The notes under the pieces were generated by a model, which worked only from the letters and a program-made list of their open reading frames with translations, searched no databases and was not told where the DNA came from. The translations under genes were made by a program, and so were the position numbers. From Squalus acanthias (lineage: Eukaryota), in assembly GCA_030390025.1 (NCBI GenBank), contig CM059434.1, positions 33,790,001 to 33,854,000 of the forward strand: DNA of 64,000 nucleotides, given 5' to 3'. Of the stretch, positions 361 to 52,956 are shown piece by piece. Within the stretch, counting starts at the first letter, position 1. Each line of letters opens with the position of its first letter.

Positions 361-854
361 CATTAAACCAGGTAGCTTCAAAATAATTCCATTGTAACTG
401 TGCAAGTTAATACTCCCAAACCAGTCTTTAAACAAGGTCATCAGCACTGAATGTTTAATCAATACTAATGGCGTGGTCCTATTCAAATTATTTTTTTAAA
501 TCGCTCCCAGTAGTTTCCAAATGACCTTGTGCAACTTTGCTAGACAGAAAAAAAATGTGAATAACACAAAATAGAGGCACTTTGTAGATATTTTCAAATT
601 TCTTTACATGATAGTAGTTTTGCTTATTTCATAGTATCTTGAATAATCAGCAACAGCACAACTTTTAGGTAAACATAAATCATCTATAAATTTCAATATA
701 AAACTGCAAATGCTCTTTAAAGAGCCTCCTCATGCACTCTTCCTCCTATATGCCAAAGAATTGCCTCTCTGCATAAAAACCCTGATAGTTATCACATTGC
801 AACTATACTGATAGCTAACTTATAACTCCTATCTGCTTCTAATTCAAAACTTGC

Positions 855-991
855 CTCCTCGTCATCCTGAGGCGGCCCTCCTCCTTTCTGTACAGAATTT
901 GCTGACACTTCACTCTGGACTAGATTGTTTCCAGCATCTTCTGCTATGCTGCCAACTTCTGGAGGCGATGCCTTTTGTTTCTTCAGGTCCT
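855..991 (-). CDS. IFTAP: IFTAP next coding exon (EDLKKQKASPPEVG...PPQDDEE)
   Basis: The acceptor ttttttcag (AG 993-992) completes the phase-1 codon G|AG (Glu), giving E-D as in human E-DHVSK. The frame is open for 137 nt to the donor GAG|GCAAGT (854-849). Downstream exons lie outside the window. Confidence 0.7.
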
Positions 992-5844: not shown

Positions 5845-5974
5845 CTTTTCTAAGGTGTATAAATGATTCCAGAAATTCATCATATGTTTGCTCATGGCTG
5901 CTGCAAAACTTTTCCAAAGCATCAAAGGTTATTCCTTCTTCCTCCATAGTTTGTGATCCTGACACAACAGGCAT
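5845..5974 (-). CDS. IFTAP: IFTAP/C11orf74/NWC first coding exon (exon about 5996-5845)
   Basis: It translates to MPVVSGSQTMEEEGITFDALEKFCSSHEQTYDEFLESFIHLRK, matching the conserved N-terminal motif of C11orf74/NWC ([23 protein letters not shown] in human). The acceptor is cttttctattctag (AG 5998-5997) and the phase-1 donor is AAAG|GTAAGC at 5844. The position antisense and upstream of RAG2 is syntenic. Confidence 0.9.
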
Positions 5975-6469
5975 ACCTAATGCAGCAGATATTATTCTAG
6001 AATAGAAAAGAGGCGCAGGAGTAGTTATGTGAAAGATATAACATATGATGATTTCATACCACAAATATAAAGTCACAGATATTTTAAGTACATGTAGGGG
6101 GATGGAAGTTTTCATAATATCAAATGCATAGTGCTAACCTGGTGTAGAACATATTTTAATACCAGAAGTTTTAGTGAAAGGTAAATTTAAAAAACATTTA
6201 ACAGGGATTGCTGACATATTGGTTATCTTGTAAATGGTTATCTTGGAGATAACGTGTAAAAGAAAGAAGAACAAACTTGCATTTATGTAGCACCATATCA
6301 TGATAACCAATACATTACTACTGAATTGCAGTCACTGTTGTTATGTAAGCAAATATAGCAGCCAATTTGTACACAAGATTTCACAAACAGCAAATGAGAT
6401 GAATGACCAGTTAATCTGTTTTTTGATGGCATTGGTTGGGGGCGAACACACTGCTCTTCTCTAAATTTT

Positions 6470-24300: not shown

Positions 24301-25010
24301 AGAAGAATGAGAGGCGATCTTATTGAAACATATAAGATTGTGAAGGGGTTGGATCGGGTGGATGCGGGGAGGATGTTCCCAATGACGGGTGAGACGAGAA
24401 CTAGGGGACATAGTCTTAGAATAAGGGGCTGCTCTTTCAAAACTGAGATGAGGAGGAACTACTTCACTCAGAGGGTGGTAGGTCCATGGAATATGCTGCC
24501 ACAAAAAGCTGTAGAAGCTACAACATTAATTAAATTTAAAACAGAAATAGACAGTTTCCTAGAAGTAAAGGGCATTAAGGGTTACGGGGAGCGGGCAGGA
24601 ATTTGGACATGAGTCTAGGTTCGGATCGGTCATGGCCCTGTGGGTAGTGGAGCGGGCCCAGGGACTGTGTAGCCTGATTCTGCTCCTATTTTGTGTGTGC
24701 AATTCTGTTAGATGCAGGAGATGGTTCTGTGATAGATAGTAGATTGGCGGTTAGGATCAGATCAGCCATGATCTTATTGAATGGCGGAGCAGGCTCGAGG
24801 GGCCGATTGGCCTACTCCTGCTCCTATTTCTTATGTTCTTATGTTCTTATGTAAAGACTGAAACAAGATATTTGTTCAGCATTTTTGCCATCTCCATGTT
24901 TCCCACCATTAATTTCCCGGTCTCATCCTCTAAGGGACCTACGTTTGCCTTAACCACCCTTTTTCTTTTTATATAACTATAGAAACTCTTGCTATCTGTT
25001 TTTATATTTC
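21345..25010 (-). mobile_element. Young CR1 LINE copy A (5'-truncated), interrupted at about 23163 by copy B
   Basis: 461-aa RT ORF 21823-23208 and an (AAGAACAT)n tail at about 21345-21366. The sequence resumes after copy B at about 24851 (GTAA at both junctions). Confidence 0.9.
23164..24850 (+). mobile_element. Young CR1 LINE copy B (5'-truncated) with open RT ORF 23167-24612
   Basis: 481-aa uninterrupted CR1 ORF2 C-terminal part (GVPQGSVLGP, FADDTK) and a (TTCTTATG)n tail at about 24828-24852. Confidence 0.92.
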
Positions 25011-27828: not shown

Positions 27829-30232
27829 GGGGGCAATTTTCCCACTGGAGGTGGGTTTCGGTTTGGGTGGGTTTGAAACCCACCTCCACTGATAGTTTTC
27901 AAAAAATTGCGATTTTCTCCTGATTGGCCACTTGATTTCAGAGGTGTGGGATGCCCTTGGTCAATTAGTGTTTTGGGACTGAAACCCGCCTCTGCTGACA
28001 TCACTTTTCCAGTCTGATTTCATGGCTTCTTGCTGCCTTGGCTCATTCCACAGGATTTCTGCCTATGCTGCACCACCTGCAACATACTCTGAGAAACCAC
28101 TATGTCCAATTCCAAGGCAAGGGCCTCCCCGAGGCTCTCGGATGAGGCGCTGCAAATGTTGTTTGAGGGGGTGACAGATAGCAGGGAAGTGCTCTTCCAC
28201 TCATCTGGGAGGAAGAGGCCTCCCAAATAAACCAAGGCTGTGTGGGTACAGCTGGCAAGGGATATAACCTCCAGATCTGTGTGCAGATTGGGAGAATGTT
28301 TCTGTGTATTGATGAAATGTTGGAAAGCTTTAAAATGGTTTGATGCCAAAATGTTGGCGTTATGGCATCTGTTCTTTCGCCTTAGGCAGCTCCACATTGC
28401 GGGCTCCGCCACACTTGCGTTGTCAGGTTGGTGGCCTGAGTGAAAGGAGGCCAGAGAGTCATGCCCATTGTCAATGATGTCTTAGGATGGAGCCAAGGAC
28501 ATGTGCCAACTTGGGCAACCTATGCAAATCTGGCCAGGATAAGTTCATCCCTTGCATCACGGGCAGCCATGTGCTCGCGTGCTGCCGCTGGTCGATACAC
28601 CGGCGCTCTGATCTCCTCCTGCTCCTCCTCCTCCTCCTCATCTGGGGAGGGCTGGAACTGAGCCACTTGCTCCTCAGGAAGCTGCAAGCCATGATGCTGT
28701 GCAATGTTGTGCAGTGCACAGCAGACCACAACCATTCTGGAGACCCTGTATGGTGTATACTGCAGGGCTCCACCTGATCGGTCAAGGCAACAGAAGCGCA
28801 TCTTCAACAACCCAATGGTTTGCTCGATGATGGGCCTGGTCGAAGTGTGGCTGGCGTTGTAGCGCTCTTCTGCCTCGTTAGCTGGCCTCCTGATCGGCAT
28901 CATTAGCCACTTCTTCAGGGGGTAGCCTTTGTCACCAAGGAGCCATCTGTTAAGTTGGTTTGGCGGATTGAAAAGCGGAGGCACACTAGAGTGCTGCAGG
29001 ATGAAAGAGTCATGGCAACTTCCACAGAACTTGGCGCAAACATGCAAGAATTCCTTCTTGTGGTTACACACCAGCTGAACGTTGAGGGAGTGGAAGCCCT
29101 TGCGGTTGACAAAGATAGCTGGGTTGTGATGGGGTGCCCTAAGGGTCACATGTGTGCAGTCTATGATGCCTTGCACCATTGGCATGCCTGCCATATTTGC
29201 AAAGCCAACCGAACGGGCGGTTATACTTGCTTGATCCCTTGAGAACTGGATGTAATTGTGGGCCTTAGCAAAAAGGGCATCGGTAACCTGCGTGATGCAA
29301 CTGTGGGCGGCCGACTGGGAGATGCCGCTGATGTCTGCTGATGATCCCTGGAAGGAGCCTGAGGCAAAGAAATTGAGTGCGGTGGTGACTTTGACAGCCT
29401 GGTAAGGGGTGTCCACCCGTTCCTCTGGGCACCAGGTCTTGCTGCAGCAGTCCGCAGATCTCTCGGACAACCTATCGCGAAAGTCTCAGCCTCCTTTGGC
29501 ACTGCTGCTCACTCATGTTGAGGTAGCTCATCCTCTGTCTGTAAAACCTTTTGTCGGGGGTATCTCCTGCGGCGAGGTGCCTCGATGCGCTGGCGCCTTC
29601 TGCCCTGTGCAGTATCAGGTGGCTGAGCAGGAGGTTGGGGCTCCTGCTGCTGTTGCTCCTGAGCTGCCTGGTTCTGCTGCTGCCGTGGCTGCTCCTCATC
29701 CTCATCTGAGGTCCATGGAGAAAGAGAACGAATGGTTCCCATGCTGCTTACAGATGCCTCTGTTGGGGAAGCGCTCATTGCAGGCGGGGAGAGGGTCTTC
29801 CAAGGAGGTCCCACAGTTGATAGATTCAAGCTGCCACACCTCCGACTTCAGAAGGCCTTCTAAAAGTGCTCAAAGACCTTTTAAAGCAAAGTTCTGGCAC
29901 CTGCAAGTAATCCCTGATGAAATAAACGATGTCTTGTTGGACCTGCAGCTGTGAGGAGACCACCCACGAGTCAACCCGCCAGGTTTAGCTGCCGTGGTTT
30001 AGGAGGGTCGTGGAACACGGCGAAATGCTCAAAAAATCACGAGGGCCTCTCAAAATAGGCTTAGAGAGGCCCTTAACGAGCATTTAATGATCTTAACTAG
30101 CGCTATGGCCAGCTGGAGGCGGAACCGTTTCCCGACCTCCAAAACCAGTTCCGAACTCGCCCTCATTGTTTCTGATTTTTCCGCCTTTCCCGCCTCCAAA
30201 TCCGCCTTCTCAGATGTCAGAAAATCGCCCCC
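27829..30232. mobile_element. PIF/Harbinger transposon with both TIRs, decayed transposase (-) and Myb/SANT fragment (+)
   Basis: TIRs GGGGGCAATTTTC / GAAAATCGCCCCC and TSD CTA (27826-27828, 30233-30235). The Myb-like ORF from 28102 (PRLSDEALQMLFEGV..REVLF) has an internal stop. Confidence 0.9.
28520..29745 (-). pseudogene. HARBI1-type DDE transposase, frameshifted near the N terminus
   Basis: The 316-aa ORF has [37 protein letters not shown] and [13 protein letters not shown]. The N terminus lies in overlapping ORFs 29472-29705 and 29509-29829. Confidence 0.9.
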
Positions 30233-33029: not shown

Positions 33030-33253
33030 GTTATCTTGCACATTTGGAACATACCACGTCATTGCTGCATCTGTTATACGCCAGCAGTCAGACAGTTACT
33101 CTCATCAGGGAAGTGCTTGGTACCGTCTGCACCCAGCTGTAAACTCTCTCAAAAATCTCCTACGCTGCCTGTATGCTGCTTATTGACCAAGTGTTCTGCA
33201 CCTTCTAATTCTACAAGCAAGTTCAGTCTCTTAAAGTACTTTGTACTGTACAG
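33030..33253 (+). promoter_or_regulatory. Candidate RAG2 lymphoid promoter and non-coding exon 1
   Basis: Unique sequence with clustered GATA (33031), E-boxes (CATCTG 33068, CAGCTG 33134), Myb-type sites (CTGTTA 33071, CAGTTA 33093) and an Ets/Ikaros-type GGGAAGTG (33108). It is followed by the donor CAG|GTAATA at 33254. Confidence 0.35.
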
Positions 33254-33772
33254 GTAATATTGTTTGAAGAAATTGATTAGAATTCAGCACTACATTCATA
33301 TTAGAGGTAAGGATGCACTACTGTCACAGTGGTTGATCCAGCTAATAGCAAACCTGTGTGTAAAAAGATTATCTGCAGTATTATTGTAGTACAACTGTTT
33401 TCAAATTAAGGTTTGTGTCGTTGACTGATTTTCCACAGCCTTTTGAAGAGTAGAAAAGTTGCTGAGCGATAGCCAGAGGTTATTATAATCAGAGCCAGTA
33501 TCTGCATAGTTAACTTACTGTTAGTCTAGAAAAATATTAAATATGCTTTGATCGGCAAAATGTTATCCTAATGTTGTAGTTAAACAGAAAAAAAACTTGC
33601 TAATGTTATCATGTTATACATTTGAGAAGGAACAAACTGAAAAGAAAATTAGATTACTAAAGCAATTGCCATATGTTATTCATTGGCATGGTCCAGAAAA
33701 TTGAGTGGGGGAGAAACGTCATGTCCTATCCAGGTGATTAAAGCTGATGATCATATTAGTGATATATATACT

Positions 33773-38310: not shown

Positions 38311-40600
38311 TCTTCTTAGGCAGTCCCTCGGAACCGAGGATGACTTGCTTCCACATTAAAAATGAGTTCTCAGGTGACTGATGGGTCCAATGCGGGACCT
38401 ACAGTCTCTGTCACAGGTGGGGCAGACGGTGGTTGAAGGGGCGGGTTGGTGGGGTGCTTGGGTCGACGTGCGCTGCTTGCGCTTGGCTTCTGCTTGCTCC
38501 CGGCGAAGAGACTCGAGGTGTTCGGCGCCTTCCCGGATACTTCTCCTCCACTTTGTGCGGTCTTGGGCCAGGGATTCCCAGGTGTCGGTGGGGATGTTGC
38601 ACTTTTTCAAGGAGGCTTTGAGGGTGTCCTTGAAGCATTTCCTCTGCCCACCTGGGGCTCTCTTGCCGTATCGGAGCTCCGAGTAGAGCGCTTGTTTTGG
38701 GAGTCTCGTATTGGGCATTCGGACGATGTGACCCTTCCATCGGAGTGGATCAAGCGTGGTCAAAGCTTCGATGATGTGGAGATGCCGGTGTTGGACTGGG
38801 GTGGACAAATGTGAGAAGTCGCACAACACCAGGTTATAGTCCAACAGCTTTATTTGAAATCACAAGCTTTTGGAGCGCTGCTCCTTCATCAGGTGAAGTG
38901 AAGAGATGCATATAGGCACAGCATATATAGTCAGAGAACACTGCCAGATGATTACAGTTAATCTTTCCAACTGCCCTTTATCACACCTCAGCAGAGAGAT
39001 AATCACGGCAATCAAAGGTGTGGATGGTGTCCAAACAGGTCAGTCAGGAAAACATTACATCAAAGACAATGTGGCAGATGCTGGGGTCTGCATGGAAAAC
39101 AAAAAACTTTTTTTGCTGGAAATCACAGCAGGTCCGGCCGCATCTGTGTAGAGAGAACAAGCCAACGACGACTCGAGTCTGGATGACTCTACGTCAGGTG
39201 GGGTTACATGTAGCGTGACATGAACCCAAGATCCTGGTTGAGGCCGTCCTCATGGGTGCGGAACTTGGCTATCAGTTTCTGCTCGACGATTTTGCGTTGT
39301 CGTGTGTCTCGAAGGCCGCCTTGGAGAACGCTTACCCGAAGATCGGAGGCTGAATGCCCTTGACTGCTGAAGTGTTCCCCGACTGGGAGGGAACACTCCT
39401 GCCTGGCGATTATTGCGCGGTGTCCGTTCATACGTTGTCGCAGTGTCTGCATGGTCTCACCGATGTACCATGCTCTGGGGCATCCTTTCCTGCAACGTAT
39501 GAGGTAGACAACGTTGGCCGAGTCACATGAGTATGTACCATGTACCTGGTGGGTGGTGTCCTCACATCTGATGATGGTATCTGTGTTGATGATCTGGCAT
39601 GTCTTGCAGAGGTTGCCGTGGCAGGGTTGTGTGGTGTCGTGGTCGCTGTTCTCCTGAAAGCTGGGTAATTTGTTGCGAATGATGGTCTGTTTGAGGTTAG
39701 GCGGCTGTTTGAAGGCGAGTAGTGGGAGGCGTGGGGATGGCCTTAGCGAGGTGTGCGCAACAATCGCCAGGCAGGAGTGTTCCCTCCCAGTTGGGGAACA
39801 CTTCAGCAGTCAAGGACATTCAGCCTCCAATCTTCGGGTAAGCGTTCTCCAAGGCTGCCTTCAAGACACATGACAACGTAAAATCGTCGAGCAGAAACTG
39901 ATAGCCAAGTTTCGCACCCATGAGGACGGCCTCAACCGGGATCTTGGGTTCATGTCACGCTACATGTAACCCCACCTGACGTAGAGTCATCCAGACTCGA
40001 GTTGTCGTTGGCTTGTTCTCTCCACACAGATGCGGCCGGACCTGCTGTGATTTCCAGCAAAAAATGTTTTTTGTTTTCCCATACAGACACCAACATCTGC
40101 CACATTGTCTTTGATGTAATGTTTTCCTGACTGACCTGTTTGGACACCATCCACACCTTTGATTGCCGTGATTATCTCTCTGCCGAGGTGTGATAAAGGG
40201 CAGTTGGAAAGATTAACTGTAAACATCTGGCAGTGTTCTCTGACTATATATGCTGTGCCTATATGCATCTCTTCACTTCACCCGACGAAGGAGCAGCGCT
40301 CCGAAAGCTTGTGATTTCAAATAAAACTGTTGGACTATAACCTGGTGTTGTGCGACTTCTCACAAAGCTTCGATGCTGGGGATATTGGCCTGAGCGAGAA
40401 CACTGACGTTGGTGCGCCTATCCTGCCAATGGATTTGCAGGATCTTGCGGAGACAGCGTTGGTGGTACCTCTCCAGTGCTTTGAGGTGCCTGCTGTACAT
40501 GGTCCATGTCTCTGAGGCATACAGGAGGGCCAGATCATCAACTTACAGACATTCAAATTGGAAGCATGGTTAACCTTGGAAAGGTCTGTGTCTTGGAAAG
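38311..40600 (-). mobile_element. RTE/BovB-like LINE 3' fragment interrupted by a Penelope element
   Basis: Peptide LRW.GHIVRMPNTRLPKQALYSEL..GKR.PGGQRK.FKDTLKASLK..CP.CDR.C.SRIG..SH; it continues after 40363. Confidence 0.85.
38774..40362. mobile_element. Penelope-like retroelement 3' part in inverted (tail-out) configuration
   Basis: GIY-YIG-type endonuclease C terminus (QTLRQRMNGHR..PVGEHF..H...LRVSVLQGG..EQKLIAKF.T..GLN.DLGF) on both strands. Inverted arms of about 600 bp. 13-bp TSD CAAAGCTTCGATG (38761-38773, 40363-40375). Confidence 0.9.
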
Positions 40601-41285
40601 GACTTCAGGAGGACAAAGGCAGGTTCGTAAACTGAATGGATTGATGGCAGATGAAATTTAATGCAGAGATATGTAGGGTGATACATGTTGGTAGGAAGAA
40701 TAAAGAGAGGATATATACATTAAATGGTAAAAAGGAAGTAAATAAATATTTGAAAAATAAAAAAAAACAGGGAACGAGCAAGGGACTGAGAGGCGGTGGA
40801 TAGCTTTCAGAAAACCAGTACAGGCAAAATCTGCCAAAAGACCTCCTTCTGTACAGTAAAATTATGATTCTACGATGATTCCTGGCTGATAGTGACCACT
40901 TGGAGCTCACTAGAACCCACGGGATTTTTTGCAAAAATGTGAATAATAGGGGAATCTCGGCTGCATCATACCCTTTAACCGTCCACTCTCCTGAAGGCTC
41001 CTTATTAGGGTATGGTTCTATGCGCATCAGGTGCCCTCTAGTACTTTTTCCAGGTGCCACTCTGTATGGGGGGGTGGGCTATTGAAGTGAGGAGAGCATC
41101 CCAGGCCAGCCTGATGCTGTTGACGACCACAGGTGGCTATATTCCGGTAGGAGTTATTGCAGGCGAGGAGTTTAAGAAGACATGGACCGCACTAAGTTAC
41201 AGCTTGTTGTTAAGGGGCCAGTTGCTAGAATTTTAAATAGTTGTAGCGAAGTTCCGCGCTGCCACTTTGATCAGGTTGTACTTAC

Positions 41286-41340
41286 TGGACTGACACTGTC
41301 CTCAGCCTCCTCCTCCTCCTGGCCCCTAGCAACGCCGAGC
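41286..41340 (-). other. IFTAP: Probable non-coding first exon of IFTAP/NWC (5' end approximate)
   Basis: A GC-rich segment just downstream (minus strand) of the ZNF143 motifs, ending in the donor CCA|GTAAGT (41285-41280). It could splice to the acceptor at 5996, giving an intron of about 35 kb. Confidence 0.6.
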
Positions 41341-41425
41341 GTCCGGGGTGGTGCACGCTGGGAGCTGTAGTCCGCCCTTCCGCCACCCAACAGGTTCGGG
41401 AACTACAACTCCCACAAGGCCAAGC
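41321..41425. promoter_or_regulatory. IFTAP/NWC promoter with two divergent ZNF143 (SBS) motifs, a GC box and an RFX X-box-like element
   Basis: ACTACAGCTCCCAGCGTGCAC on minus (41371-41351), ACTACAACTCCCACAAGGC on plus (41402-41420), CCGCCC at 41372-41377 and GGCCCCTAGCAAC at 41321-41333. The island is locally CpG-rich and non-repetitive. Confidence 0.8.
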
Positions 41426-42809
41426 GGCACTTTCCTCCACTGGAATTGCGCCCCCGAGGAATTATGCCCTGTTGGCCTTGGTTCCCCAACCAAATGTAAG
41501 AGGGAGCTTGGGGGGAGCACATGTATCATTTTATATCTCCTATAGCATCACATAGTCTTGAATATGTTGTTACTATCAGCGCTCCCGAATAATTAATCCC
41601 ACAACTATCGCGGCAGATAATGTTTAAAATGTGGTTTTGTCCCGCCGTAACTTCAAATCCGTAGTAAACAAGCCAGCTTTGAATAAGAGGATGAGTACTG
41701 TCATTGGTCCATATTCATACACTCATACATCAGACTCCCCATTCTTACATATTATACACCAATCTATACTCTTACATATTGGCCCAAATCTTTCTGGCAA
41801 AATAATGGCGAGTTCACGGCACACGCCGTTAATTGATGCGCAAATCATAAGGGTCGGTAACCTGAGGACACAGATTTAAGGTGATTGGCAAAAGAACCAG
41901 AGGTGACATGAGAAACATACATTTTATGCAGCGAGTTGTTATGATCTGGAATGCACTGCCTGAAAGGGTGCTGGAAGCAGATTCAATGGTAACTTTCAAA
42001 AGGGAATTGGATAAATATTTGAAGGGAAAAATTTGCAGGGCTACAGGTAAAGAGCAGAGAAGTGGGGCTAATTGGATAGCTCTTTCAAAGAGCTGGCACT
42101 AGCACAATGGGCCGAATAGCCTCCTTCTGTGCTGTATCATTCTATGATTCTGGGAGAAACTTCTTTACCCAAAGAATGTGGAACTTGCTACCACAAAGAG
42201 TTGTTGAGGCAAATAGCATAAATTATTTAAAGGAAAGCAAGATAAGCACGAGGGAGAAAGGAATAGAAGGATATGCTAAAAGGATTAGTTGAAGTAAGGT
42301 GGGAGGAGGCTCTTGTGGAGCATAGATCAATTGGGCCGAATGGCCTGATTCTGTGCTGTAAATTCCATATAATTTAATATATATAAAATCAGCCAGCAAG
42401 TTCAGGCGAAGAGGAGATATCCCATGAGTTGCGAATCGTCATAACTTGCTGGTTGATTTATGCCGTTTTACTCACACAGATGGCAGTGTGTCTTCAACCT
42501 CCCCATTATTTTTAAGATCTTTTTGGATTTACACATTAAACTCAAATTAAGCTCGCCGCAGAAAGTTAGGGCTCGTACTTAAGTACCCTTTTAATGATGT
42601 GATAATTGTTAATGCAATCAACCTCTCTGGAGCTGTATGTAATAAATATTCCTGGAGATTTAAAAAATTTAAAATGTTATTTTTTCTTACTTTTCCTTTC
42701 TGTCTCTTTTTTTCCTCTCTCTCACTCTATCTCTCTCTTAATCCAATCTTTCTTTCCCTCTCTATTTCTCTTTCTGTACCTGATTTGACTCTGATTCACC
42801 CTCTCTTCA

Positions 42810-43247
42810 TCATTGTGGAACCTGACGCTATATCCTCGGATGCTGTCGCCGAGGGGCAGCACATTGATGAGGAAGAGGAGGTGGCCAAGAATAGATGCTT
42901 AGGGGACTTAGAGGCAATGGTGTGGGACTGGAAGAGAAACCATTGCTGGAATTTGGATAGTTAAGAGTGGAACCAAGCGAGGGCAGTCCCACTCAGTTGG
43001 GCAATGAAGAAGGGATATTGGAGAAGGATAGTGTAGTCAACCATGTCAGAGGCTGCAGAGAGGTCAAGAAGGGTGAGGAGGGATAGTGTGCCATGGTCAC
43101 AGTCACAGAAGATGTCATTTGTGACTTTGATTGTAGCTGTATCAAGGCAGAAACTTGTAAAAATGAAGTTGTAGGAAAGGTGTGTACGCATTTGAGAGGC
43201 GACAACACATTCAAGGACTTTGGAGAGGAAAGGGAGATTGGAGATAG
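42810..43247 (-). mobile_element. L2 LINE fragment
   Basis: Peptide ISNLPFLSKVLE..LLDLSAASD in ORF 42961-43269. Confidence 0.75.
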
Positions 43248-46200
43248 TGTTGAGGCTGCCGCGAAACACGAATTAAAGCTGAATCCATGTGTGGAAAAAG
43301 AGAGACTTTAATGCAACTGCATGGTCCAAAATGGCTGACCGACTGCTCCCAGAATTCTCTGGAAAAATCCTGAGGCCCCGCCCACTCCTGCCTTAAAGGT
43401 AAGGTGCCTTAAAGGGAAGGTGCATCGAATTATTGTCCACGGACAGAAAAGTGCATAATGCCCGTTTAGGTGGCGATCCGCCACACAGCTCCCCCCAGAA
43501 TCCGCTTAGGAGGTGTGGACGAGACGGTGCGGCGGTCTGATGGGCCGGCCGGAGCGGCTCTTGTAGGACGCCGGTGGACGTGGAACGGCCGGGCATGGAG
43601 CAGCCGGGTGAACCGGCTTGAGGGCAGGTCGGCCGCGTGGAGGTGGACGAGCTACAGGGACCTGCTCACCGGGCTCCGAGTGTGCTGGCTTGAGTCGGTC
43701 AACCGACACTTTTTCGGTCCTGTCGCCCACTTGCAGGGTGAAAAATTTGTCCCCAGCCTGCAGCACCTTGTAGGGCCCGTCGTACGGGGGTTGAAGGGGT
43801 CCGCGGTGGGCGTCGTGCCGGACGAAAACGAACCGTACCTGGTGCAGGCTTAGTGGGACATGTGAGGTGGATTCGCCGTGTCGGGCAATGGGCACCGGGG
43901 CGAACAGCAGCGCCGGTGAGGCGAAGTCGTGGCGTTGCTGGTCGGCTCACCAGGGTGTCGTGGCGGTGGGCAGGAACTCGCCGGGTATGCGCAGCGGCTG
44001 ACCGTACACGAGCTCTGCTGCCAATGCGTGAAGGTCTTCTTTAACCGCGGTGCACAGGCCGAGGAGGACCCACGGAAGTCGGTCGGTCCAGGCGCCGTCT
44101 TGGAGGCTGGCTCGAAGAGATGCCTTCAAGGATCTGTGGAACCGCTCACACAGTCGGTTGGCTTGGGGGTGGTACGCTGTGGTGCGGTGAATGGTCACCC
44201 CAAGATTGCGTGCGACAGCAGTCCAGAGTTCAGAGGTAAATTGCGGACCTCTGTCCGACGTCATGTCGGAGGGGACGCCGAACCGTGCGAACCAGGTGCT
44301 GACGAAGGCTCTGGCAATGTCGGCGGTGGTGGTATAGGTCAGTGGAATTGCCTCGGGCCAGCGCGTGGTGCGGTCAACGATCATCAGCAAGTGCGTGTGG
44401 CCTTGCGACGGCGGCAGGGGCCCGATGATGTCCACGTGGATGTGGTCGAATCTCCACGAGGGGACGGTAAACTCCTCGAGGGGTGCTTTCGTGTGTTGCT
44501 GTACGTTGGCCCATTGGCAGGCTAGGCAGGAGTTGGCCCAAGTACGCATATCCTTGCGAAGGCCGCGCCAGACGAAGCGGTTGGCTACTAATTTGATGGA
44601 TGCGCGGGCGCCGGGGTGGGAGAGGTTGTGGAGAATGTCGAATACCCAGTGGCGCCAGGACGCTGGGACGACGGGCCGAAGTTGACATAGGGATGGATAT
44701 GTCGCACTTGACCGTGACTGCGGTCGGGCCACAGGCAACGTCGGCCAGGTGTAGACCTGGTAGGTTGGTGGGTGCGGAGAGCAGATCAGGGTCGGTGATC
44801 TGGTCTGCTGCGAGTTGAGCGTAGTCGACTGCTAGGTGTGCGGCGTGGATGGCGGGGCGGGAGAGGCAGTCAGCTACCACATTGTCTCGGCCGGAGACGT
44901 GTTGGATGTCCATGGTGAACTCGGACACTGCCGCGAGCTGGCGCTGCTGCCTGGCAGACCAGGGGTCGGTTGTCTTTGCCATTGCGAATGTCAGGGGCTT
45001 GTGGTCGACAAACGCAGTGAAGGGGTGGCCCTCAAGCAAAAACCGGAAATGGCGGACCGCCAGGAACAGCGCGAGGAGCTCGCGGTCGAAGGTGCTGTAC
45101 TTGACCTCCGGGGGGCGTAGTTGGCGGCTGAAGAAGGCAAGTGGTTGCCAGGCGCCATCGACCCACTGCTCATACACGGCGCCGACCGCGTGGTCGGAGG
45201 CGTCCGTGGTGAGCGCTACCCTGGCATTGGGCCATGGGTGCGCGAGCAGGGTGGCGTTGGCGAGCGCGGTCTTGGTGGAGTTGAAGGCGGCGGACGCGTC
45301 TGCCGTCCATTCGACCACCATCTTGCCGCTCCTGCCCCGGAGGGCTTCATACAGGGGCTGCATGAGGGACGCCGCTTTGGGGATGAAGCGGTTATAGAAA
45401 TTCACCATCCCGAGGAACTCCTGGAAGCCTTTGATGGTGGTGGGGCGGGGAAATTGTTGGGCGGCCTGCACCTTGGTGGGCAGGGGAATGGCCCCAGCAT
45501 GGGTGATGTGGTGGCTGAGGAAGTCGATCTTGTCCAGGCCGAACTGGCATTTGGCTGGGCTGAGGATGAGCCCGTGGTCGCTGAGGCGCCCGAACAGGAT
45601 GCGAAGGTGTTCGAGGTGTTCCTGCTTGGAGGAACTGGCTACCAGGATGTCGTCCAGGTAGACGAACAGGAACTTCAGGTCTCGAAGGAATGCCTGGGCC
45701 GCGTTTTTGAGGCCGAAGGGCATCCGCAGGAACTCGAACAGGCCGAAGGGGGCGATTACGGCCGTCTTGGGGACGTCCGCGGGGTGGACGGGGACTTGGT
45801 GGTAGCCGCGCACCAGGTCGACCTTGGAAAAGACTGAGCGGCCGGCCAGTCTAGCCGAGAAGTCCTGAATGTGCGGCACGGGGTACCGATCAGGGGTGGT
45901 GGCGTCGTTGAGGGGGCGGTAATCCCCGCAGGGGCGCCAACCCCCGCCTGGTTTGGGGGCGATGTGGAGTGGGGAGGCCCAGGGGCTGTTGGAGCGGCGG
46001 ATGATGCCGAGCTGTTCCATGGTGGCAAACTCGGTCCGCGCGATCTCCAGTTTGGTCGGGTCCAGCCTGCGGGCGTGGGCGTACACTGGGGGGCCTGTGG
46101 TGGGGATGAAGTGTTCCACCCCGTGTTTGGCAGCCTCCGCGGAGGAGGTTGGATTGGTAAGGGCCGGGAATTCGGCCAGGAGTGCCGAGTAGTCATCCGT

Positions 46201-47581
46201 GGCCCAGGCGTGGCACTGTGACGCCATGTCGGCGGGTTGACGGGGGGCCATGGCGCCCAGGATGGTGGACATGGTGTTCATGTCCACGAGGCGGTGACGA
46301 GGGATGTCTACCAGTAGGCCGTGGGCGCACAGGAAATCTGCACTGATGAGAGGGGAGAGCACCTTGGCAGTGATGAACTCCCATCGGTAGCGGCGACCAG
46401 CGAGGTCGAGGGTGACTGTCCGAGTGCCATACGTCCGGATTTCCGAGCCGTTAGCAGCAGCCAGCGCCGGTCATCGTTCGCCCTTTTGGATGTCGAGGGA
46501 GGAGGCCGGGATGATGCTGTGCTGAGCCCCAGTGTCGCACAGGAACCGGCGGCCGGTTTTGTCATCCGTGACGAACAGCAGGGAGCCCGCGCGGCCCACG
46601 GCCATCGCTGGGGCTGGTACGGGGGCGGACTTGAAAGAGCAGGGAGGTGTGCACCGTTCTGCCCTGGCGCCGAACCGTGCGTGGTAGTAACAGTGGCCCG
46701 GGTTAGTGGGGCGCGAAGGCCCCGTGGGCCTGGTGGCTGGTCCTTGTGGCTGCGTGGTGGCCGGTGAGGGGCGCGCCCAGGCATTGGCTGCCAGGTCCGG
46801 AGTGACGTCGCGGCTGGAGTGAGCGGACAGCAGCTTGTCGGCCTCATCGGCCAGGGCTTCCAGGTTCGTGAGGCCGGATGCCACGATCGCTGGGCGGATG
46901 CTGAGAGGGAGCTGGCGGTTGAACAGCGTGCGGAAGAGGGATCCGGGTGGGCTCTCGTCGGTGACGGAGAGCATGTGGGAGAGGAGGTCTGACGGTGAGG
47001 CATCACCGAGGCCTGGAAGGTCGAGGAGGTGGCAGTTTCGCTGATATGCCGAGGCCGTAAATTTTTTAAGGAGCGCTGTCTTGAGATGTGCGTACTTGCC
47101 TTCCTCTGGTGGGTTCTGCAGCGTTGTCCAAACCTTCGAAACTGTGGCGCTACCGAGTGATGTGACGAGATAGTCGTACTTCGTCCCATCTGTGGTGATG
47201 CTTCGCAGCCGGAAGCGCGATTCAGCTTGGAGAAACCAGGCTTCGGGCTGGTTTTCCCAAAACTCCGGCAGTTTCACGGAAACTGCGTTCGTGTCTGCCA
47301 TTGCAGTGCTCGGAATACATTCTGAGCGTCGGGGTCACCAATGTTGAGGCTGCCGCGAAACACGAATTAAAGCTGAATCCATGTGTGGAAAAAGAGAGAC
47401 TTTAATGCAACTGCATGGTCCAAAATGGCTGACCGACTGCCCCCAGAATTCTCTGGAAAAATCCTGAGGCCCCGCCCACTTCTGCCTTAAAGGTAAGGTG
47501 CCTTAAAGGGAAGGTGCATCGAATTATTGTCCACGGACGGAAAAGTGGAAAATGCCCGTTTAGGTGGCGATCTGCCACACA
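43248..47581 (-). mobile_element. Near-complete Gypsy/Ty3 LTR retrotransposon
   Basis: 240-bp LTRs at 43248-43487 and 47342-47581 (TG...CA, about 6 differences by eye). PBS TGGTGACCCCGACG (47340-47327) is complementary to the tRNA-Trp 3' end. A purine-rich PPT (GGGGGGAG) lies just inside the left LTR at about 43488-43497. Confidence 0.95.
43506..47301 (-). pseudogene. Gypsy gag-pol polyprotein broken by frameshifts
   Basis: Gag (VSVKLPEFWENQPEAWF; CYYHARFG..A.RC..PC), protease (FLCDTGAQHS), RT (WASPLH, RMPFGLKNA, YLDDIL), RNase H (TTDAS, YSTFDRELLA) and integrase (HVDIIGP, SDRGPQF, ERFHRSLK, PYDGPY) in the order PR-RT-RH-IN. Confidence 0.93.
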
Positions 47582-47630: not shown

Positions 47631-50276
47631 GGGCTCGATTTTTATAGAGGAGGCAGGTTGAGGGCGGGCCCGCTGCTCGGCATTTTTCGGACCCGCTCCC
47701 AGATGCCGCCGGCCCGCAGTTACGATTTTTACTTAATCGATACGGCCGACGTGTGGGTCCCTCAGGCAATTGCTTGGAGCATGTCAGTTTCTCGCATCTG
47801 ATGAAGCGTTTCTGGAGTAAAAAAAGGGGCCATGTCCCCTTTGCAAGAAATGTAAGTGGAATGGCTTGGTGCTGTATTATATAGAAAGGGGAGTTGACAG
47901 TGGCTGGTCTGAACACAAATAATGGATTGAAATTGTTGGTCATATTATTCCAGAAAGACATTTATGATTTTTTTATCTGTCAATGTAGTACGTGACTAAG
48001 AAATGAAAAAGATGCCAGATGTGTTCCAATCAGTGGCTTAGTAAAATTAATACTTTTTTCTCTTAAAGGTGCTGGCTGCTGCAGGAATGGCAGCCCCAAA
48101 CACTGTGGCTGCAGCCAGGTTCAATGAGGGCTCCCTCCATGCTCTTGTGGAGGGAGTTAGAGGACGTCAGGAGGTCCTCTTCCCTGGAAACGGAAGGAGG
48201 AGGCCTCCTCAGCAAACCAAGGCAGCTTGGCTGCAAATTGCTGAGGAGGTGAGTTTGAGGTCTGTGTGCAGACGCACATGGGTTGAGTGTGGAAAAAGGT
48301 TTAATGATCTGCTGAGATCCCCTAAAGTGTGGCCTCTGTGTTCTGGGAAATGGAAGTTCAAGAGTGAGGGCTCAGGGCGAATGCCATGTAGAATGTTTGT
48401 GGTGACACTGAGCGCTTTAGTAGACAGATGATGCCTGGGGTTTTGAGAATGTCGAACTTATATTCATCTCCATGTGCCAGCCACCTGTAGTTGAAGTGTA
48501 AGCTTACGCGAATCTGTCATGGATGAGCGCATCCCTTGCCTGACTGCCAGCAATGTGTTCGCCTGCTGCTGGATTGGCCACATCTGGCCTCGCAAAGCGT
48601 CACTCCCCATCCTCCTCCTCATCCTCTTCCTCATCCTCTTCCTCGTCCTCTTCCTCTTCCTCTGAGGAGGCTGTGCGCTGAGCCACTTGTTCCTCGGGCA
48701 GCACTAAGCCGCGCTGCTGTGCGATGTTGTGCAGGGCACTGCAGACCACGATGATTCTGGACACCCTGGCTGGTGCATACTGCAAGGCTCCTGCAGATCT
48801 GGCTAGGCATCGGATGCGCATTTTGAGCAAGCCGATGGTTTGTTCGATGATGCTTTTGGTGGATATGTGGCTCAAATTTACCGCTCCTCAGCATCGTTTG
48901 ATGGCCTCCTCATCGGTGTCATAAGCCATTTTTTCAGGGGATAGCCCTTGTCGCCAAGAAGCCATCAAACCAGCCAAGAAGCTGGTTTGGCGGATGGAAG
49001 AGCTGAGGCACAGTAGACTGGCGCAGGATGAAGGAGTCATGGCAACTGCCAGGGTACTTTGCACAAACATACAGGATGATCTTCCTATGGTTACACACCA
49101 GCTGGTTGACAAATACAGCTGGGTTGTGATAGGGGGCCCTAATGGCTACATGTGTGCAGTCAATGACGCCCTGCACCATTGGCAAGCCTGCCATATTGGC
49201 AAAGCCAACAGCACGCGCCGTCACACTTGGGCCATCCATGGAGAAGTGGATATAATTGTGGGCCTTTGCAAAGAGGGCGTTGGTGACCTACATGATGCAG
49301 GTGTGTGCGGCCGACTGGGAGATGCTGCTGATGTCTGCTGATGATCCCTGGAAGGAGCCCGAAGCAAAGGAATTGAGTGCGGTGGTGACTTTGACAGCAA
49401 CTGGTAAGGAGTGTCCACATGCTCCTCTGGGCTCCAGGTGTTGGTGCAGCATTGCGCAGATGTCTGCGCCTACATCTCTCGAAAGTCTCAGCCTCCTTTG
49501 GCACTGCTGCTCAGTCATACTGAGGTAGCTGATCCTTTGCCTGTAAACCCTGTGTTGGGGGTATCTCCTGCAGCGAGATGCAGCCCTATGCTGACGCCCT
49601 CCACCCTGTGCATCATCAGGTGGGTGAGGAGGAGGTTGGCGCTCCTGGTGCTGGTGCTGCTGTTGTGGCTGGTTGTGGTGCTGCCGCGGCTGCTCTTCCT
49701 CCGAATCTGACGACCAGGATGAGAGGATATAAATGTTTCCCATCCCGTACCTATAGATTTCACTTGAGGCAAGAAGCTTGCAAGCGCACAGTCAAAGTGG
49801 CCTGAAATTATTCCAATCAGGTCACACTGCAGATGGCTGTCAGCTTGAACAGTCAAGGTCAGTAGATTTGCAAAATTTTATACCAAACCTCCAACAACAA
49901 GGTTGTTGCATTTGAATGTCAGCCATGTTACAGAAGCGCTTTTAAAGTGCTGCACCAATTACTACAAATCATGTCCTCCAGCAACTCGTCTCCTTGCAGC
50001 TGGCCTGTTTCTGACAAGACAGGAAATAGGAGCCAGAGGCATGAAAATGGAAAACCACTATGAAAATAGGATTAGCAAGGCAGTTAACAGGCTGTTAACT
50101 GCCTTAACTACCTGTCCCAGCGGTTCCAGTCAGGTCAGTTTGGGAGCGGCTGAACAGACACGAAAATCGGGTGGGGGCGGGATGGAGGCGGGTTGGGGGT
50201 CTGAAGCCATTTTTTCCGATTTTCGCTGCTGACCCGCCTCCAAACCCGCCTCCTCAGGGCTATTAAAATCGTACTC
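47631..50276. mobile_element. Second PIF/Harbinger transposon (Myb/SANT gene +, transposase -), about 1.1 kb upstream of the RAG2 CDS
   Basis: Imperfect TIRs GGGCTCGATTTT / AAAATCGTACTC with TSD ACA. Myb ORF 48069-48431 (ARFNEGSLHALVEGV..EVLFP..AW.QIAEEV..RTW.ECGKRFNDL). Frameshifted transposase from 49743 to about 48500 ([27 protein letters not shown]). Confidence 0.9.
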
Positions 50277-50845: not shown

Positions 50846-51396
50846 GCAGTCTCCAGCTGATGCAAGTTCAGCCCATATCAGGACTCAACAGTTTGAGAGT
50901 TCCATTGTAATTTTTACAACATCCCACTGCCCCCCCCCCCCCCCCCCAGATGTTCCAAAGAAAGAACAATACACAAAAACAGAAAATACCCAGAGGTGGA
51001 ATTGAAAAAAACCAAAGTGGGCTGAATGAAGATTTATTGAAACTCACTGCTGTACCAATGTTGGAAGCAATTACAGCTTGTGCATTACAAATAATTGATT
51101 TTTTTTTTTCAAATCAATGTAGTGCAATGTGTTCATCATTTAACAACATAAAAGAATTTCATCAACCCAAAGTAATTGAATTTTGAAATATAAAATGAAG
51201 GTCATTTTTAATCGTTGATTTATCAGACAAATTATAGCCAAAAAGTAGCGTTTGTACACCTATCAAAAAGTTGTAGAGTGGTTAGTTCTGCTTCATCACA
51301 ATCTGTGATAATCAATTTTGCTTTAAATCTTTCATTTCTAATATTATTTTATATTTCTTTTCCTTTCAAAGGTACTCTCTGCTTTCCACTGCAGCA

Positions 51397-52956
51397 ATGT
51401 CCCTAGAAATGGTTTCAGATAGCAGCAATACAGCCCTTATACATCCGGGATTCTCCTTATTGAATTTTCATGGTGAAGTCTTTCTTTTTGGCCAGAAAGG
51501 GTGGCCTAAAAGATCCTGCTGTACAGGTGTTTTTCTTCTTCATCTCAAAGATCACATTCTCAAACTGAAAGCTGTTTCATTTTCGTCTGACTCGTGCTAC
51601 CTTCCACCGTTGCGTTGCCCTGCAATAACTCATTACTCAGATCCCTCGGAAACAAAGAGCCTTTTTTATCTCATTCACGGTGGGAGAGCTCCAAATAATG
51701 AATTGCCTAATTTGCTTTACCTCATGATGGTTTACAGCAATGCTGGTTACAAGAGAACATCCCTTCGTTGCATTGAAAAAAATCTAAAAGGAGATGTCCC
51801 CCAAGGAAGATATGGTCATACCATCAATGTGATTCAGAGCAAGGGACAAACCACGTGTGTCTTGTTTGGGGGTAGATGTTACCGGCCTCCAGGGCAAAGA
51901 ACCACAGAAAACTGGAACAGTGTAGTGGACTGTTTGCCACAGGTTTTTCTGATTGATATAAACACCGGCCATTGCACATCCCACATGCTTCCAGAAATAG
52001 AAGATGGTTTTTCATTCCATGTCTCCATTGCAAAAATTGACACTGTCTATATATTAGGTGGACATTCCATTGAAACCAATCATCGCCCTGCAAGATTGCT
52101 CAGTCTAAAAGTTAATCTGTTAGGGAACTATCCAAGCGTAAACTGTACAATACTGCAGAGTGGTATCTCTGTATCAAGTGCAATAGTGACCCAGGCTGGC
52201 AAAGATGAATTCATAATTGTTGGTGGCTATGAATCCGAGAGCCAGAAGCGAATGATTTGTAACACCATCGTTTTGGAGAATGACAACATTCAGATTTTGG
52301 AAAAGGAGCCCCCAGCATGGGCTAGTGATATTAAAGCAAGCAAAACCTGGTTTGGTAGTGATATGGGAAGTAGTGCAGTGTTAATCGGCATTCCTGGAGA
52401 AAGCAAACAGGATACAGCTGAGGCAAACTACTTCTATATAGCAAATTTTGGAAAGTTAGAAGAAGAAAGCCAAGTTTCTGCCAGCCAGGAATCCTTTACT
52501 GATCCGGAAGAATGCAGCACATTTGAAGATTCAGAAGAATTTCACTTTATAGTGGATGCTGATGGCTCTGATGATGTTGAGAACTTGGATAATGGTGATG
52601 AGGAAGGTTACTGGATTAAATGCAGTGCCACCTGTAATGTGAATATCAACATCTGGGTGCCTTACTACTCCACAGAGCTCAATAAACCTGCTATGATCTT
52701 CTGCTCCAATGGAGGAGATGATGGGCACTGGGTACATGCCCAGTGCATGGATCTCGCAGAATCACAGCTGCTTCAGTTTTCTCAGGAGAACACAAAGTAT
52801 TTTTGCAATGAGCATCATATTGACAGAGGAATTCAAACTCCACCGAAGAAAAAACAGATAAAGCGAACGCCAATAAAATCCCCGCGTAAGAAATCACCAG
52901 CAACACTGAAAAGGACGCCAATGAAGAAGAGCTTTCTGAAGAGACTGTTTGATTGA
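51397..52956 (+). CDS. RAG2: V(D)J recombination-activating protein 2 (519 aa, single coding exon)
   Basis: The ORF matches RAG2 throughout. The beta-propeller core includes FGQKGWPKRSC..GVF, SCYLPPLRCPA, RYGHTINV and RTTENWNSVVDC. It is followed by an acidic hinge, the PHD finger (GYWIKC..C..WVPYYSTELNKPAMIFCS..GHWVHAQCMDL..KYFCNEH), a T490-equivalent QTPPKK and the C-terminal KKSFLKRLFD. A polypyrimidine tract and AG acceptors lie just upstream (51370-51371, or 51393-51394). Confidence 0.99.
   Translation: MSLEMVSDSSNTALIHPGFSLLNFHGEVFLFGQKGWPKRSCCTGVFLLHLKDHILKLKAVSFSSDSCYLPPLRCPAITHYSDPSETKSLFYLIHGGRAPNNELPNLLYLMMVYSNAGYKRTSLRCIEKNLKGDVPQGRYGHTINVIQSKGQTTCVLFGGRCYRPPGQRTTENWNSVVDCLPQVFLIDINTGHCTSHMLPEIEDGFSFHVSIAKIDTVYILGGHSIETNHRPARLLSLKVNLLGNYPSVNCTILQSGISVSSAIVTQAGKDEFIIVGGYESESQKRMICNTIVLENDNIQILEKEPPAWASDIKASKTWFGSDMGSSAVLIGIPGESKQDTAEANYFYIANFGKLEEESQVSASQESFTDPEECSTFEDSEEFHFIVDADGSDDVENLDNGDEEGYWIKCSATCNVNINIWVPYYSTELNKPAMIFCSNGGDDGHWVHAQCMDLAESQLLQFSQENTKYFCNEHHIDRGIQTPPKKKQIKRTPIKSPRKKSPATLKRTPMKKSFLKRLFD

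What the first reader, a model, noticed from the sequence alone, without database searches (positions are those of the whole stretch)
41280..41425. Divergent twin-ZNF143 promoter with X-box upstream of the RAG2 coding exon: the shark NWC/IFTAP bidirectional promoter
Seen: a short unique CpG-rich island carries two near-consensus ZNF143 motifs (ACTACAnnTCCCA) pointing in opposite directions around a GC box. It also has an RFX X-box-like element and a minus-strand GTAAGT donor, and lies 10 kb upstream of the RAG2 coding exon. Established: in mammals the NWC/IFTAP promoter sits in the RAG2 intron, depends on ZNF143 and is bidirectional, and it has been proposed to have helped domesticate the RAG transposon. 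RFX factors regulate ciliary/IFT genes. Inference: this is the orthologous promoter in an early-branching jawed vertebrate. A ciliary-gene promoter could thus drive RAG2-sense transcripts outside lymphocytes.
Basis: partly seen in the sequence, partly recalled or inferred. Interest (0 to 1): 0.85.

Follow-up and report, generated by a model that had tools for sequence, protein, structure and literature searches.

The report
Shark IFTAP/NWC promoter beside RAG2
A small single-copy GC-rich block upstream of the shark RAG2 coding exon carries two back-to-back ZNF143 sites, as in the published mouse and human NWC/IFTAP promoter, so it is most likely the shark version of that known promoter, although no RNA data could be had to show that it is active.

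Summary
The core observation holds. ACTACAnnTCCCA occurs twice in 64 kb, at 41359-41371(-) and 41402-41414(+), against 0.02 expected. The two sites point apart around a GC box.

The block is single copy amid repeats. Its core is less diverged than its flanks in DNA contigs of a relative about 5% diverged.

The gene context fits. RAG2 is at 51397-52956(+) and the first coding exon of IFTAP at 5996-5845(-), opening with a splice acceptor. The only good minus-strand donor below the sites ends an exon at 41286.

The layout matches the ZFP143-dependent bidirectional NWC promoter in the RAG2 intron of mouse, human, dog, Xenopus and Latimeria (PMC3439442).

Weaker parts: CpG enrichment is marginal and the X-box-like element is at chance level.

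Transcription was not tested.

A 2018 paper, seen by title only, claims conservation across jawed vertebrates. Verdict: a probable new member of a known kind, of modest interest. The scan has not noted this element on other DNA.

The parts
41348..41373 (-). IFTAP-side ZNF143/ZFP143 site (core ACTACAGCTCCCA at 41371-41359)
   Evidence: Exact core match. Matches 23 of 26 positions of the published consensus. The only listed change in the relative within the core, 41364 G>A, is at an N position.
41400..41425 (+). RAG2-side ZNF143/ZFP143 site (core ACTACAACTCCCA at 41402-41414)
   Evidence: Exact core match. Matches 23 of 26 positions. No listed change in the core in the relative; the changes at 41423, 41426 and 41429 lie in the loose 3' part.
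41372..41388 (.). GC box (CCGCCC) and CACCC-type box (CCGCCACCC) between the two sites
   Evidence: Read directly. The motif names are recalled, not tested.
41286..41338 (-). Putative non-coding IFTAP exon 1. The 5' end is inferred by analogy with mouse; the donor GT is at 41285-41284.
   Evidence: This is the only donor with 7 or more of 9 matches on the minus strand between 41345 and 40900. The mouse TSS lies 10-20 nt beyond the proximal site. There is no RNA evidence.
41319..41333 (+). X-box-like element, weak
   Evidence: One mismatch to the recalled consensus. 10 such matches in the window against 20-29 in shuffles.
41435..41495 (+). Hypothetical RAG2-sense first exon ending at donor AAT|GTAAGA. 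Inferred only.
   Evidence: 7 of 9 donor match at 41495. No RNA evidence.
40864..41848 (.). Single-copy block that holds the promoter, bounded by repeats
   Evidence: Depth is 6-53 in bins 40864-41651 of X1-X3 (256-1,112 in the last bin, 41652-41848) against 1e4-6e6 outside. One colinear contig per run. No intra-window copy of 40725-41845.
5845..5996 (-). First coding exon of IFTAP (acceptor AG 5998-5997, ATG 5974, donor GT 5844-5843)
   Evidence: Pfam PF17722 IFTAP at E 1.5e-11, 45.1 bits against a cut-off of 29.3, profile positions 5-44. Aligns to residues 1-43 of shark IFTAPs.
850..991 (-). Second coding exon of IFTAP (acceptor AG 993-992; 3' end approximate)
   Evidence: tblastn with P0121-P0124 and P0126. 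Acceptor and frame read.
51397..52956 (+). RAG2 coding exon ORF (alternative acceptors give exon starts at 51372 and 51395)
   Evidence: Pfam RAG2 1.3e-149 and RAG2_PHD 2e-41. 93% identity to Heptranchias perlo RAG2. Acceptors read.
43248..47581 (-). LTR retrotransposon inserted between the promoter and the RAG2 exon (context)
   Evidence: 240-bp LTRs 97.5% identical. Pfam hits to rve, RVT_1, RNase H and DUF7041.

Best explanation
The block at about 41286-41425 is the shark orthologue of the NWC/IFTAP promoter that in mammals sits just upstream of the RAG2 coding exon.

Inferred mechanism: two ZNF143 (ZFP143/Staf) sites in inverted orientation, helped by a GC box, recruit the activator to a TATA-less GC-rich core. 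Minus-strand transcription starts about 10-20 nt beyond the IFTAP-side site, near 41330-41340. It yields a short non-coding exon that ends at 41286 and splices across a TE-filled intron of about 35 kb to the first coding exon of IFTAP at 5996.

By analogy with mouse, the same core may also fire on the plus strand. That would give RAG2-sense transcripts that could use the donor at 41495 and the acceptors before the RAG2 ATG.

Shown here: the motifs and their rarity, the gene order and strands, the need for an upstream non-coding IFTAP exon, single-copy status, and lower divergence of the core. Inferred: ZNF143 binding, the start sites, both splices and bidirectionality.
For: - Twin motifs: 2 observed against 0.02 expected, with 0 of 100 shuffles reaching 2. 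Each matches 23 of 26 positions of the published consensus.
- Spacing: the 26-nt sites are 26 nt apart, 52 nt centre to centre. In mouse the sites are at -10/-37 and -74/-100, described as inverted repeats 40-50 bp apart. The same is reported for human, dog, Xenopus tropicalis and Latimeria.
- IFTAP first coding exon at 5996-5845(-) matches Pfam IFTAP at 1.5e-11. It aligns to residues 1-43 of IFTAP of Heterodontus and Hemiscyllium, 7-49 of Mustelus and 2-33 of Callorhinchus. It begins at a polypyrimidine-AG acceptor.
- RAG2 lies on the opposite strand, 10 kb away. About 7.5 kb of that gap is recognisable TE, which leaves about 2.5 kb of unique DNA.
- The single good minus-strand donor is at 41286.
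- The block is single copy in three DNA runs of a relative.
- In that relative, 4 of the 20 listed substitutions in 41072-41463 fall in the 246-nt core 41177-41422. The binomial P is 0.00012. The one change inside a motif core is at an N position.
- No snRNA, tRNA or other Rfam family lies within 39.5-43.5 kb.
Against: - There is no RNA evidence at all. No listed holder is on record as RNA. The small 'RNA?' run X4 has zero depth over 41061-41651.
- The contigs of X1-X3 run colinearly through 41286, so they are DNA and say nothing about splicing.
- CpG observed/expected is 0.57-0.62, barely above the window's 0.505. This is not a clear CpG island as described for mammals.
- A donor of 7 of 9 quality occurs about once per 450 nt on this strand (143 in 64 kb), so it is weak support alone.
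- The list of differences is truncated (447 rows not shown), so the footprint statistic assumes the list is complete up to 41463.
- No orthologous shark locus could be fetched.
- The putative intron 1 is very long, about 35 kb.
Confidence: 0.72

Rival explanations
1. The block binds ZNF143 but is not the main IFTAP start. It could be a secondary or alternative promoter, as the mouse has an exon 1b promoter. It could also be a ZNF143-marked regulatory or looping element of the RAG locus, with the main IFTAP 5' exon elsewhere between 6 and 51 kb.
For: Mouse has a second Nwc promoter in the same intron (PMC3035778 passages). Transcription was not tested here. The 35-kb intron leaves room for other exons. 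Many other GC-rich segments exist in the window.
Against: No other SBS motif exists in the window. The other CpG-rich segments that I classified are transposable elements. The geometry of the sites and a donor at the right distance fit the main mouse promoter.
Confidence: 0.13
2. The block is primarily the RAG2 promoter of this shark, or one promoter shared by both genes. Its plus-strand exon would be the regular RAG2 5' exon, not a by-product.
For: The RAG2 coding exon needs an upstream exon, since acceptors lie at 51372 and 51395. A plus-strand donor lies at 41495, 70 nt below the RAG2-side site. After removing TEs the block is only about 2.5 kb from the RAG2 exon. The other candidate RAG2 exon at 33030-33260 (note s1-889625) is unverified; I only read its sequence.
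Against: In mouse the lymphoid RAG2 promoter is separate and further upstream. It silences the NWC promoter by transcription through it (PMC4157847 abstract and passages). ZNF143-type GC-rich cores are typical of broadly expressed genes (general knowledge). No data here speak for lymphoid use.
Confidence: 0.1
3. The block is a chance or repeat-derived motif pair, or the distal element of an snRNA-type gene, with no role for IFTAP or RAG2.
For: ZNF143/Staf sites also serve snRNA-type genes (general knowledge). The function of the block is untested.
Against: 0 of 100 shuffles gave 2 motifs. Depth is single-copy and the core is less diverged than the flanks. No Rfam family at E up to 1 and no tRNA lies within 39.5-43.5 kb.
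Confidence: 0.04

Closest known systems
Mouse/human NWC (C11orf74, IFTAP) promoter in the RAG2 intron (Laszkiewicz et al. 2012, PMC3439442; 2014, PMC4157847)
   Same: - It lies upstream of the RAG2 coding exon and is divergent from it.
- It sits 5' of IFTAP, whose first coding exon needs a non-coding exon 1.
- It has two inverted ZFP143 consensus sites some tens of bp apart in a GC-rich TATA-less core.
- The same twin sites are reported for dog, Xenopus tropicalis and Latimeria.
   Different: - It is 10 kb from the RAG2 ATG rather than close to it, about 7.5 kb of that being TE insertions.
- CpG enrichment is marginal.
- The TCCCA cores read TGGGAG on the other strand, not the Ikaros-type TGGGAA reported for mouse and human. 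A CGGGAAC does overlap the 5' edge of the RAG2-side site.
- Activity, ZFP143 binding and bidirectionality are not shown here.
Generic ZNF143/SBS-driven bidirectional GC-rich promoters of vertebrate housekeeping genes
   Same: ACTACA-extended SBS motifs close to the start site, a GC box, no TATA box, and divergent gene partners.
   Different: The partner here is a domesticated transposase subunit gene (RAG2). Its coding exon lies kilobases away and must be reached by splicing.
Distal sequence elements of snRNA-type genes (Staf/ZNF143 sites)
   Same: The same factor motif.
   Different: No snRNA, 7SK, Y RNA or tRNA-Sec gene is nearby. No octamer or PSE arrangement was looked for or seen.

Membership tests
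NWC/IFTAP bidirectional promoter of the RAG locus | Lies 5' of IFTAP on the IFTAP strand, and IFTAP's first coding exon is preceded by a non-coding exon | tested here: met
   IFTAP exons lie at 5996-5845(-) and about 991-850(-). An acceptor sits directly before the exon that holds the ATG. The block lies upstream on the same strand.
NWC/IFTAP bidirectional promoter of the RAG locus | Lies upstream of the RAG2 coding exon, head to head with RAG2 | tested here: met
   RAG2 ORF at 51397-52956(+), 9,983 bases from the plus-strand site.
NWC/IFTAP bidirectional promoter of the RAG locus | Lies inside a RAG2 intron, so a RAG2 non-coding exon lies further upstream | not testable with these tools
   No RNA run holds the stretch. 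The candidate exon at 33030-33260 (note s1-889625) was only read.
NWC/IFTAP bidirectional promoter of the RAG locus | Two ZFP143 consensus sites as inverted repeats some 40-50 bp apart | tested here: met
   The gap between the 26-nt sites is 26 nt and the centres are 52 nt apart.
NWC/IFTAP bidirectional promoter of the RAG locus | Associated CpG island | tested here: inconclusive
   GC is 0.61-0.64 and CpG observed/expected 0.57-0.62 over 146-231 nt, against 0.505 window-wide.
NWC/IFTAP bidirectional promoter of the RAG locus | IFTAP transcripts start here and splice to the first coding exon | not testable with these tools
NWC/IFTAP bidirectional promoter of the RAG locus | Bidirectional activity giving RAG2-sense transcripts; dependence on ZFP143 | not testable with these tools
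   This needs reporter assays, EMSA or ChIP, and stranded RNA data.
NWC/IFTAP bidirectional promoter of the RAG locus | Ikaros TGGGAA cores overlapping both ZFP143 sites (the mouse/human silencing switch) | tested here: inconclusive
   Both cores read TGGGAG. One CGGGAAC lies at 41397-41403 (read).
RFX/X-box regulated ciliary gene promoter | A conserved X-box, better than chance, near the start site | tested here: not met
   There is a one-mismatch match only. The window holds 10 such matches and shuffles gave 20-29. No held paper links IFTAP/C11orf74 to RFX.

The most novel reading that the evidence does not exclude
In this early-branching shark the twin-SBS block may be the ancestral shared promoter of IFTAP and RAG2. 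Its plus-strand exon (about 41435-41495) would be a regular RAG2 5' exon. It would lack the mammalian Ikaros TGGGAA switch inside the ZNF143 cores. That would preserve the state proposed for the moment the RAG transposon settled beside a host bidirectional promoter.
Probability: 0.1. Interest if true: 0.6.

Novelty: new member of a known kind. Interest (0 to 1): 0.3.

Why it matters
If confirmed by RNA data, this places the RAG2-IFTAP head-to-head arrangement, with its twin ZNF143 sites, in an elasmobranch. That would date it to the common ancestor of jawed vertebrates. This is the premise of the published idea that a host bidirectional promoter helped the RAG transposon to survive and be domesticated.

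It adds a data point rather than a new concept. Conservation was shown for mammals, Xenopus and Latimeria in 2012, and a 2018 paper that I could not read claims it for jawed vertebrates in its title.

A possibly useful detail is that the Ikaros-type core of the mouse sites is not kept in the shark cores.

Tried and rejected
- Orthologous loci.
- RNA evidence. The look-up of sequencing runs found no RNA holder. The three holders (0.28 of the words) turned out to be DNA contigs of a relative about 5% diverged, colinear through 41286. X4 ('RNA?') had no depth on the block.
- X-box/RFX. Tested and rejected as above chance. Literature searches for C11orf74 or IFTAP with RFX gave nothing relevant.
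- snRNA-type gene or tRNA nearby. None found.
- Repeat origin. Rejected.
- CpG island. Only marginal.
- Literature on NWC in sharks. No relevant paper in the held library. Sniezewski et al. 2018 (Dev Comp Immunol 81:105) is not held. I saw its title only, in reference lists, and it may already cover cartilaginous fish.
- Supplements were not asked for. Those of PMC3439442 could hold alignments that bear on the spacing comparison.
- Joined exons. I searched the IFTAP model exon by exon (5846-5974 alone) and left out any joined-exon search.

Full report
**What is in the sequence**

The pattern ACTACAnnTCCCA occurs exactly twice in the 64-kb window, at 41359-41371 on the minus strand and 41402-41414 on the plus strand. 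Dinucleotide-preserving shuffles give a mean of 0.02, and 0 of 100 reach two matches. Extended to the 26-nt ZFP143 consensus printed in PMC3439442 (RRACTACANNTCCCRNNNNNCNNGCG), each site matches 23 of 26 positions, the misses lying in the 3' GCG part. The only other places in the window within 4 mismatches are two 4-mismatch hits that lack the ACTACA/TCCC core.

The two sites point away from each other, with CCGCCC (41372-41377) and CCGCCACCC (41380-41388) between them. On the minus strand a donor CCA|GTAAGT has its last exon base at 41286. It is the only donor with at least 7 of 9 consensus matches between 41345 and 40900 on that strand. Donors of that quality occur 143 times on the minus strand of the window, so this is only mild support. 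On the plus strand the first such donor is AAT|GTAAGA, with last exon base 41495.

The block is GC-rich (0.637 over 41280-41425), but its CpG observed/expected ratio is 0.57 (8 CpG), or 0.62 over 41250-41480. The whole window has 0.505. I would not call it a clear CpG island.

The X-box-like CTGGCCCCTAGCAAC (41319-41333) has one mismatch to GTNRCC-N0-3-RGYAAC, a consensus I recalled. The window holds 10 matches of that quality and five block shuffles gave 20-29. Two literature searches found no paper linking C11orf74/IFTAP to RFX. The RFX argument therefore has no support.

**Gene context**

- The ORF at 51397-52956(+) is RAG2: Pfam RAG2 1.3e-149 and RAG2_PHD 2e-41. It is 93% identical to Heptranchias perlo RAG2 and 75-85% to seven other chondrichthyans.
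- Just before its ATG lie two AG acceptors, giving exon starts at 51372 and 51395. RAG2 therefore has at least one upstream non-coding exon.
- On the minus strand, 5996-5845 is an exon with a polypyrimidine-AG acceptor, an ATG at 5974 and a GTAAGC donor.
- Its 43 residues match Pfam IFTAP (PF17722) at E 1.5e-11, 45.1 bits against a cut-off of 29.3, profile positions 5-44.
- In a search of 1.84 billion representatives, 12 proteins scored E up to 0.001. The exon aligns to the very N-terminus (1-43) in the two best hits and at or near it in the other named ones.
- The hits I looked up are named IFTAP in Heterodontus francisci (86% identity), Hemiscyllium ocellatum, Mustelus asterias, Callorhinchus milii and Latimeria.
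- A second coding exon lies at about 991-850(-), in frame across the junction. The rest of the gene lies beyond the window start.
- I searched the exon alone and did not join exons.

Thus IFTAP and RAG2 are head to head, and IFTAP needs a non-coding first exon somewhere upstream of 5996 on the minus strand. The twin-SBS block is the only SBS-bearing place in between.

**Is the block unique and conserved?**

Nothing else in the window matches 40725-41845.

Three runs of unknown kind hold 0.28 of the sampled words. Laid on 38500-44400 at 80% likeness, these runs show depths of 6-53 in the four bins covering 40864-41651. Depth is 256-1,112 in the next bin, which ends at 41848, and 1e4-6e6 in all 25 other bins. 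The block is therefore single copy amid repeats.

Each run gives one contig colinear with the window:
- X1: 959 nt on 40969-41878, with 39 substitutions.
- X2 and X3: 780 nt on 41072-41817, with 34 substitutions.

So they are genomic DNA of a relative about 5% diverged. Since they run straight through 41286, they say nothing about splicing.

Of the 20 listed substitutions shared by the three runs in 41072-41463:
- 11 fall in 41090-41176.
- 4 fall in the 246-nt core 41177-41422 (at 41228, 41247, 41299 and 41364).
- 5 fall in 41423-41463.

The binomial P for 4 or fewer of 20 in the core is 0.00012. It is 0.0044 if all 34 are counted and none of the unlisted ones is in the core. The caveat is that the table is truncated (447 rows not shown), so completeness up to 41463 is my assumption.

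The one change inside a motif, 41364 G>A, is at an N position. Both ACTACA...TCCCA cores, the donor GTAAGT and the GC box carry no listed change. The 'RNA?' run X4 (129 million letters) has zero depth over 41061-41651, which is no proof of silence.

**Distance to RAG2**

Of the 9,983 bases between the plus-strand site and the RAG2 ATG, about 7.5 kb are recognisable insertions:
- CR1-like and other repeats at 41846-43245.
- An LTR retrotransposon at 43248-47581, with 240-bp LTRs 97.5% identical and rve, RVT_1 and RNase H domains.
- A Harbinger-type copy at 48505-50257.

About 2.5 kb of unmatched DNA remains. That is compatible with the published statement that the NWC promoter lies near the RAG2 coding exon.

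**Comparison with what is known**

PMC3439442 (abstract, passages, and section 7 in full) reports the following:
- The non-coding first exon and promoter of NWC lie in the RAG2 intron, divergent from RAG2.
- The promoter is CpG-island associated, bidirectional and activated by ZFP143 through two sites.
- The sites are imperfect inverted repeats 40-50 bp apart, also present in human, dog, Xenopus tropicalis and Latimeria.
- The word 'shark' does not occur in that paper.

PMC4157847 (abstract and passages) places the mouse sites at -10/-37 and -74/-100 from the NWC start. It reports Ikaros TGGGAA cores overlapping them.

In the shark the 26-nt sites leave a 26-nt gap and their centres are 52 nt apart, which is the same class of layout. 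By analogy the IFTAP start would lie near 41330-41340, giving an exon 1 of about 45-55 nt. This is inference. The shark cores read TGGGAG rather than TGGGAA, though a CGGGAAC overlaps the 5' edge of the RAG2-side site. Conservation of the Ikaros switch is therefore open.

PMC3035778 (passages) describes a second Nwc promoter in the same mouse intron, which keeps a rival reading alive.

A 2018 paper by Sniezewski et al. is titled as showing conservation of the bidirectional NWC promoter in jawed vertebrates. I saw it only as a title in reference lists, and it is not held. Searches for NWC with shark, elephant shark, Callorhinchus or cartilaginous found no relevant held paper.

**Alternatives examined**

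- An snRNA-type gene served by Staf sites: no Rfam family at E up to 1 in 39.5-43.5 kb and no tRNA in 38-45 kb.
- Repeat-derived motifs: excluded by copy number.
- A separate or shared RAG2 promoter: cannot be excluded without RNA. The scan's other note of a RAG2 first exon at 33030-33260 was only read, not tested.

**Verdict**

The block is most likely (about 0.7) the shark orthologue of the known NWC/IFTAP promoter. Its motif architecture, position and strand relations were met on testing. Its activity, bidirectionality and factor binding are untested. It is a new member of a known kind.

Noticed in passing
window 43248-47581: An LTR retrotransposon on the minus strand with 240-bp LTRs 97.5% identical (43248-43487 and 47342-47581). 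Its ORFs carry a DUF7041 gag-like domain, RT/RNase H and integrase. It looks like a fairly young insertion between the promoter block and the RAG2 exon.
   Followed up: partly
window 28520-29742 and 48505-50257: Two Harbinger/PIF-type copies. The ORF at 28520-29470 has DDE_Tnp_4 at E 5e-36. The two copies are 78% alike over 1.1 kb and lie in the same orientation, on either side of the promoter block.
   Followed up: partly
window 38810-39173 and 40000-40364: An inverted duplicate of 365 bp at 96.4% identity just left of the single-copy block. Part of it (40276-40363) also matches 195-357.
   Followed up: no
P0121 (Heterodontus francisci XP_067901970.1) against window 1007-552: The 479-aa 'uncharacterized protein iftap' aligns to the window past the end of the second coding exon, through stop codons. 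It is about twice as long as the other shark IFTAPs (223-249 aa). This public gene model probably reads through an intron.
   Followed up: partly
window 51370-51396: Two AG acceptors lie 23 nt apart directly before the RAG2 ATG, giving exon starts at 51372 and 51395. This suggests alternative 5' UTR splice forms.
   Followed up: no
runs X1-X3 on window 40969-41878: The only public runs holding the block belong to two organism labels that share all 20 listed differences from the window. The window's own species seems to have no served run, and its RAG2 is not in the protein collection. The best hit is 93% to Heptranchias perlo.
   Followed up: partly
window 21823-24612: Two long CR1/RT-like ORFs lie head to head (461 aa on the minus strand and 481 aa on the plus strand) with near-identical protein stretches. 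The scan already noted this as s1-889626.
   Followed up: no
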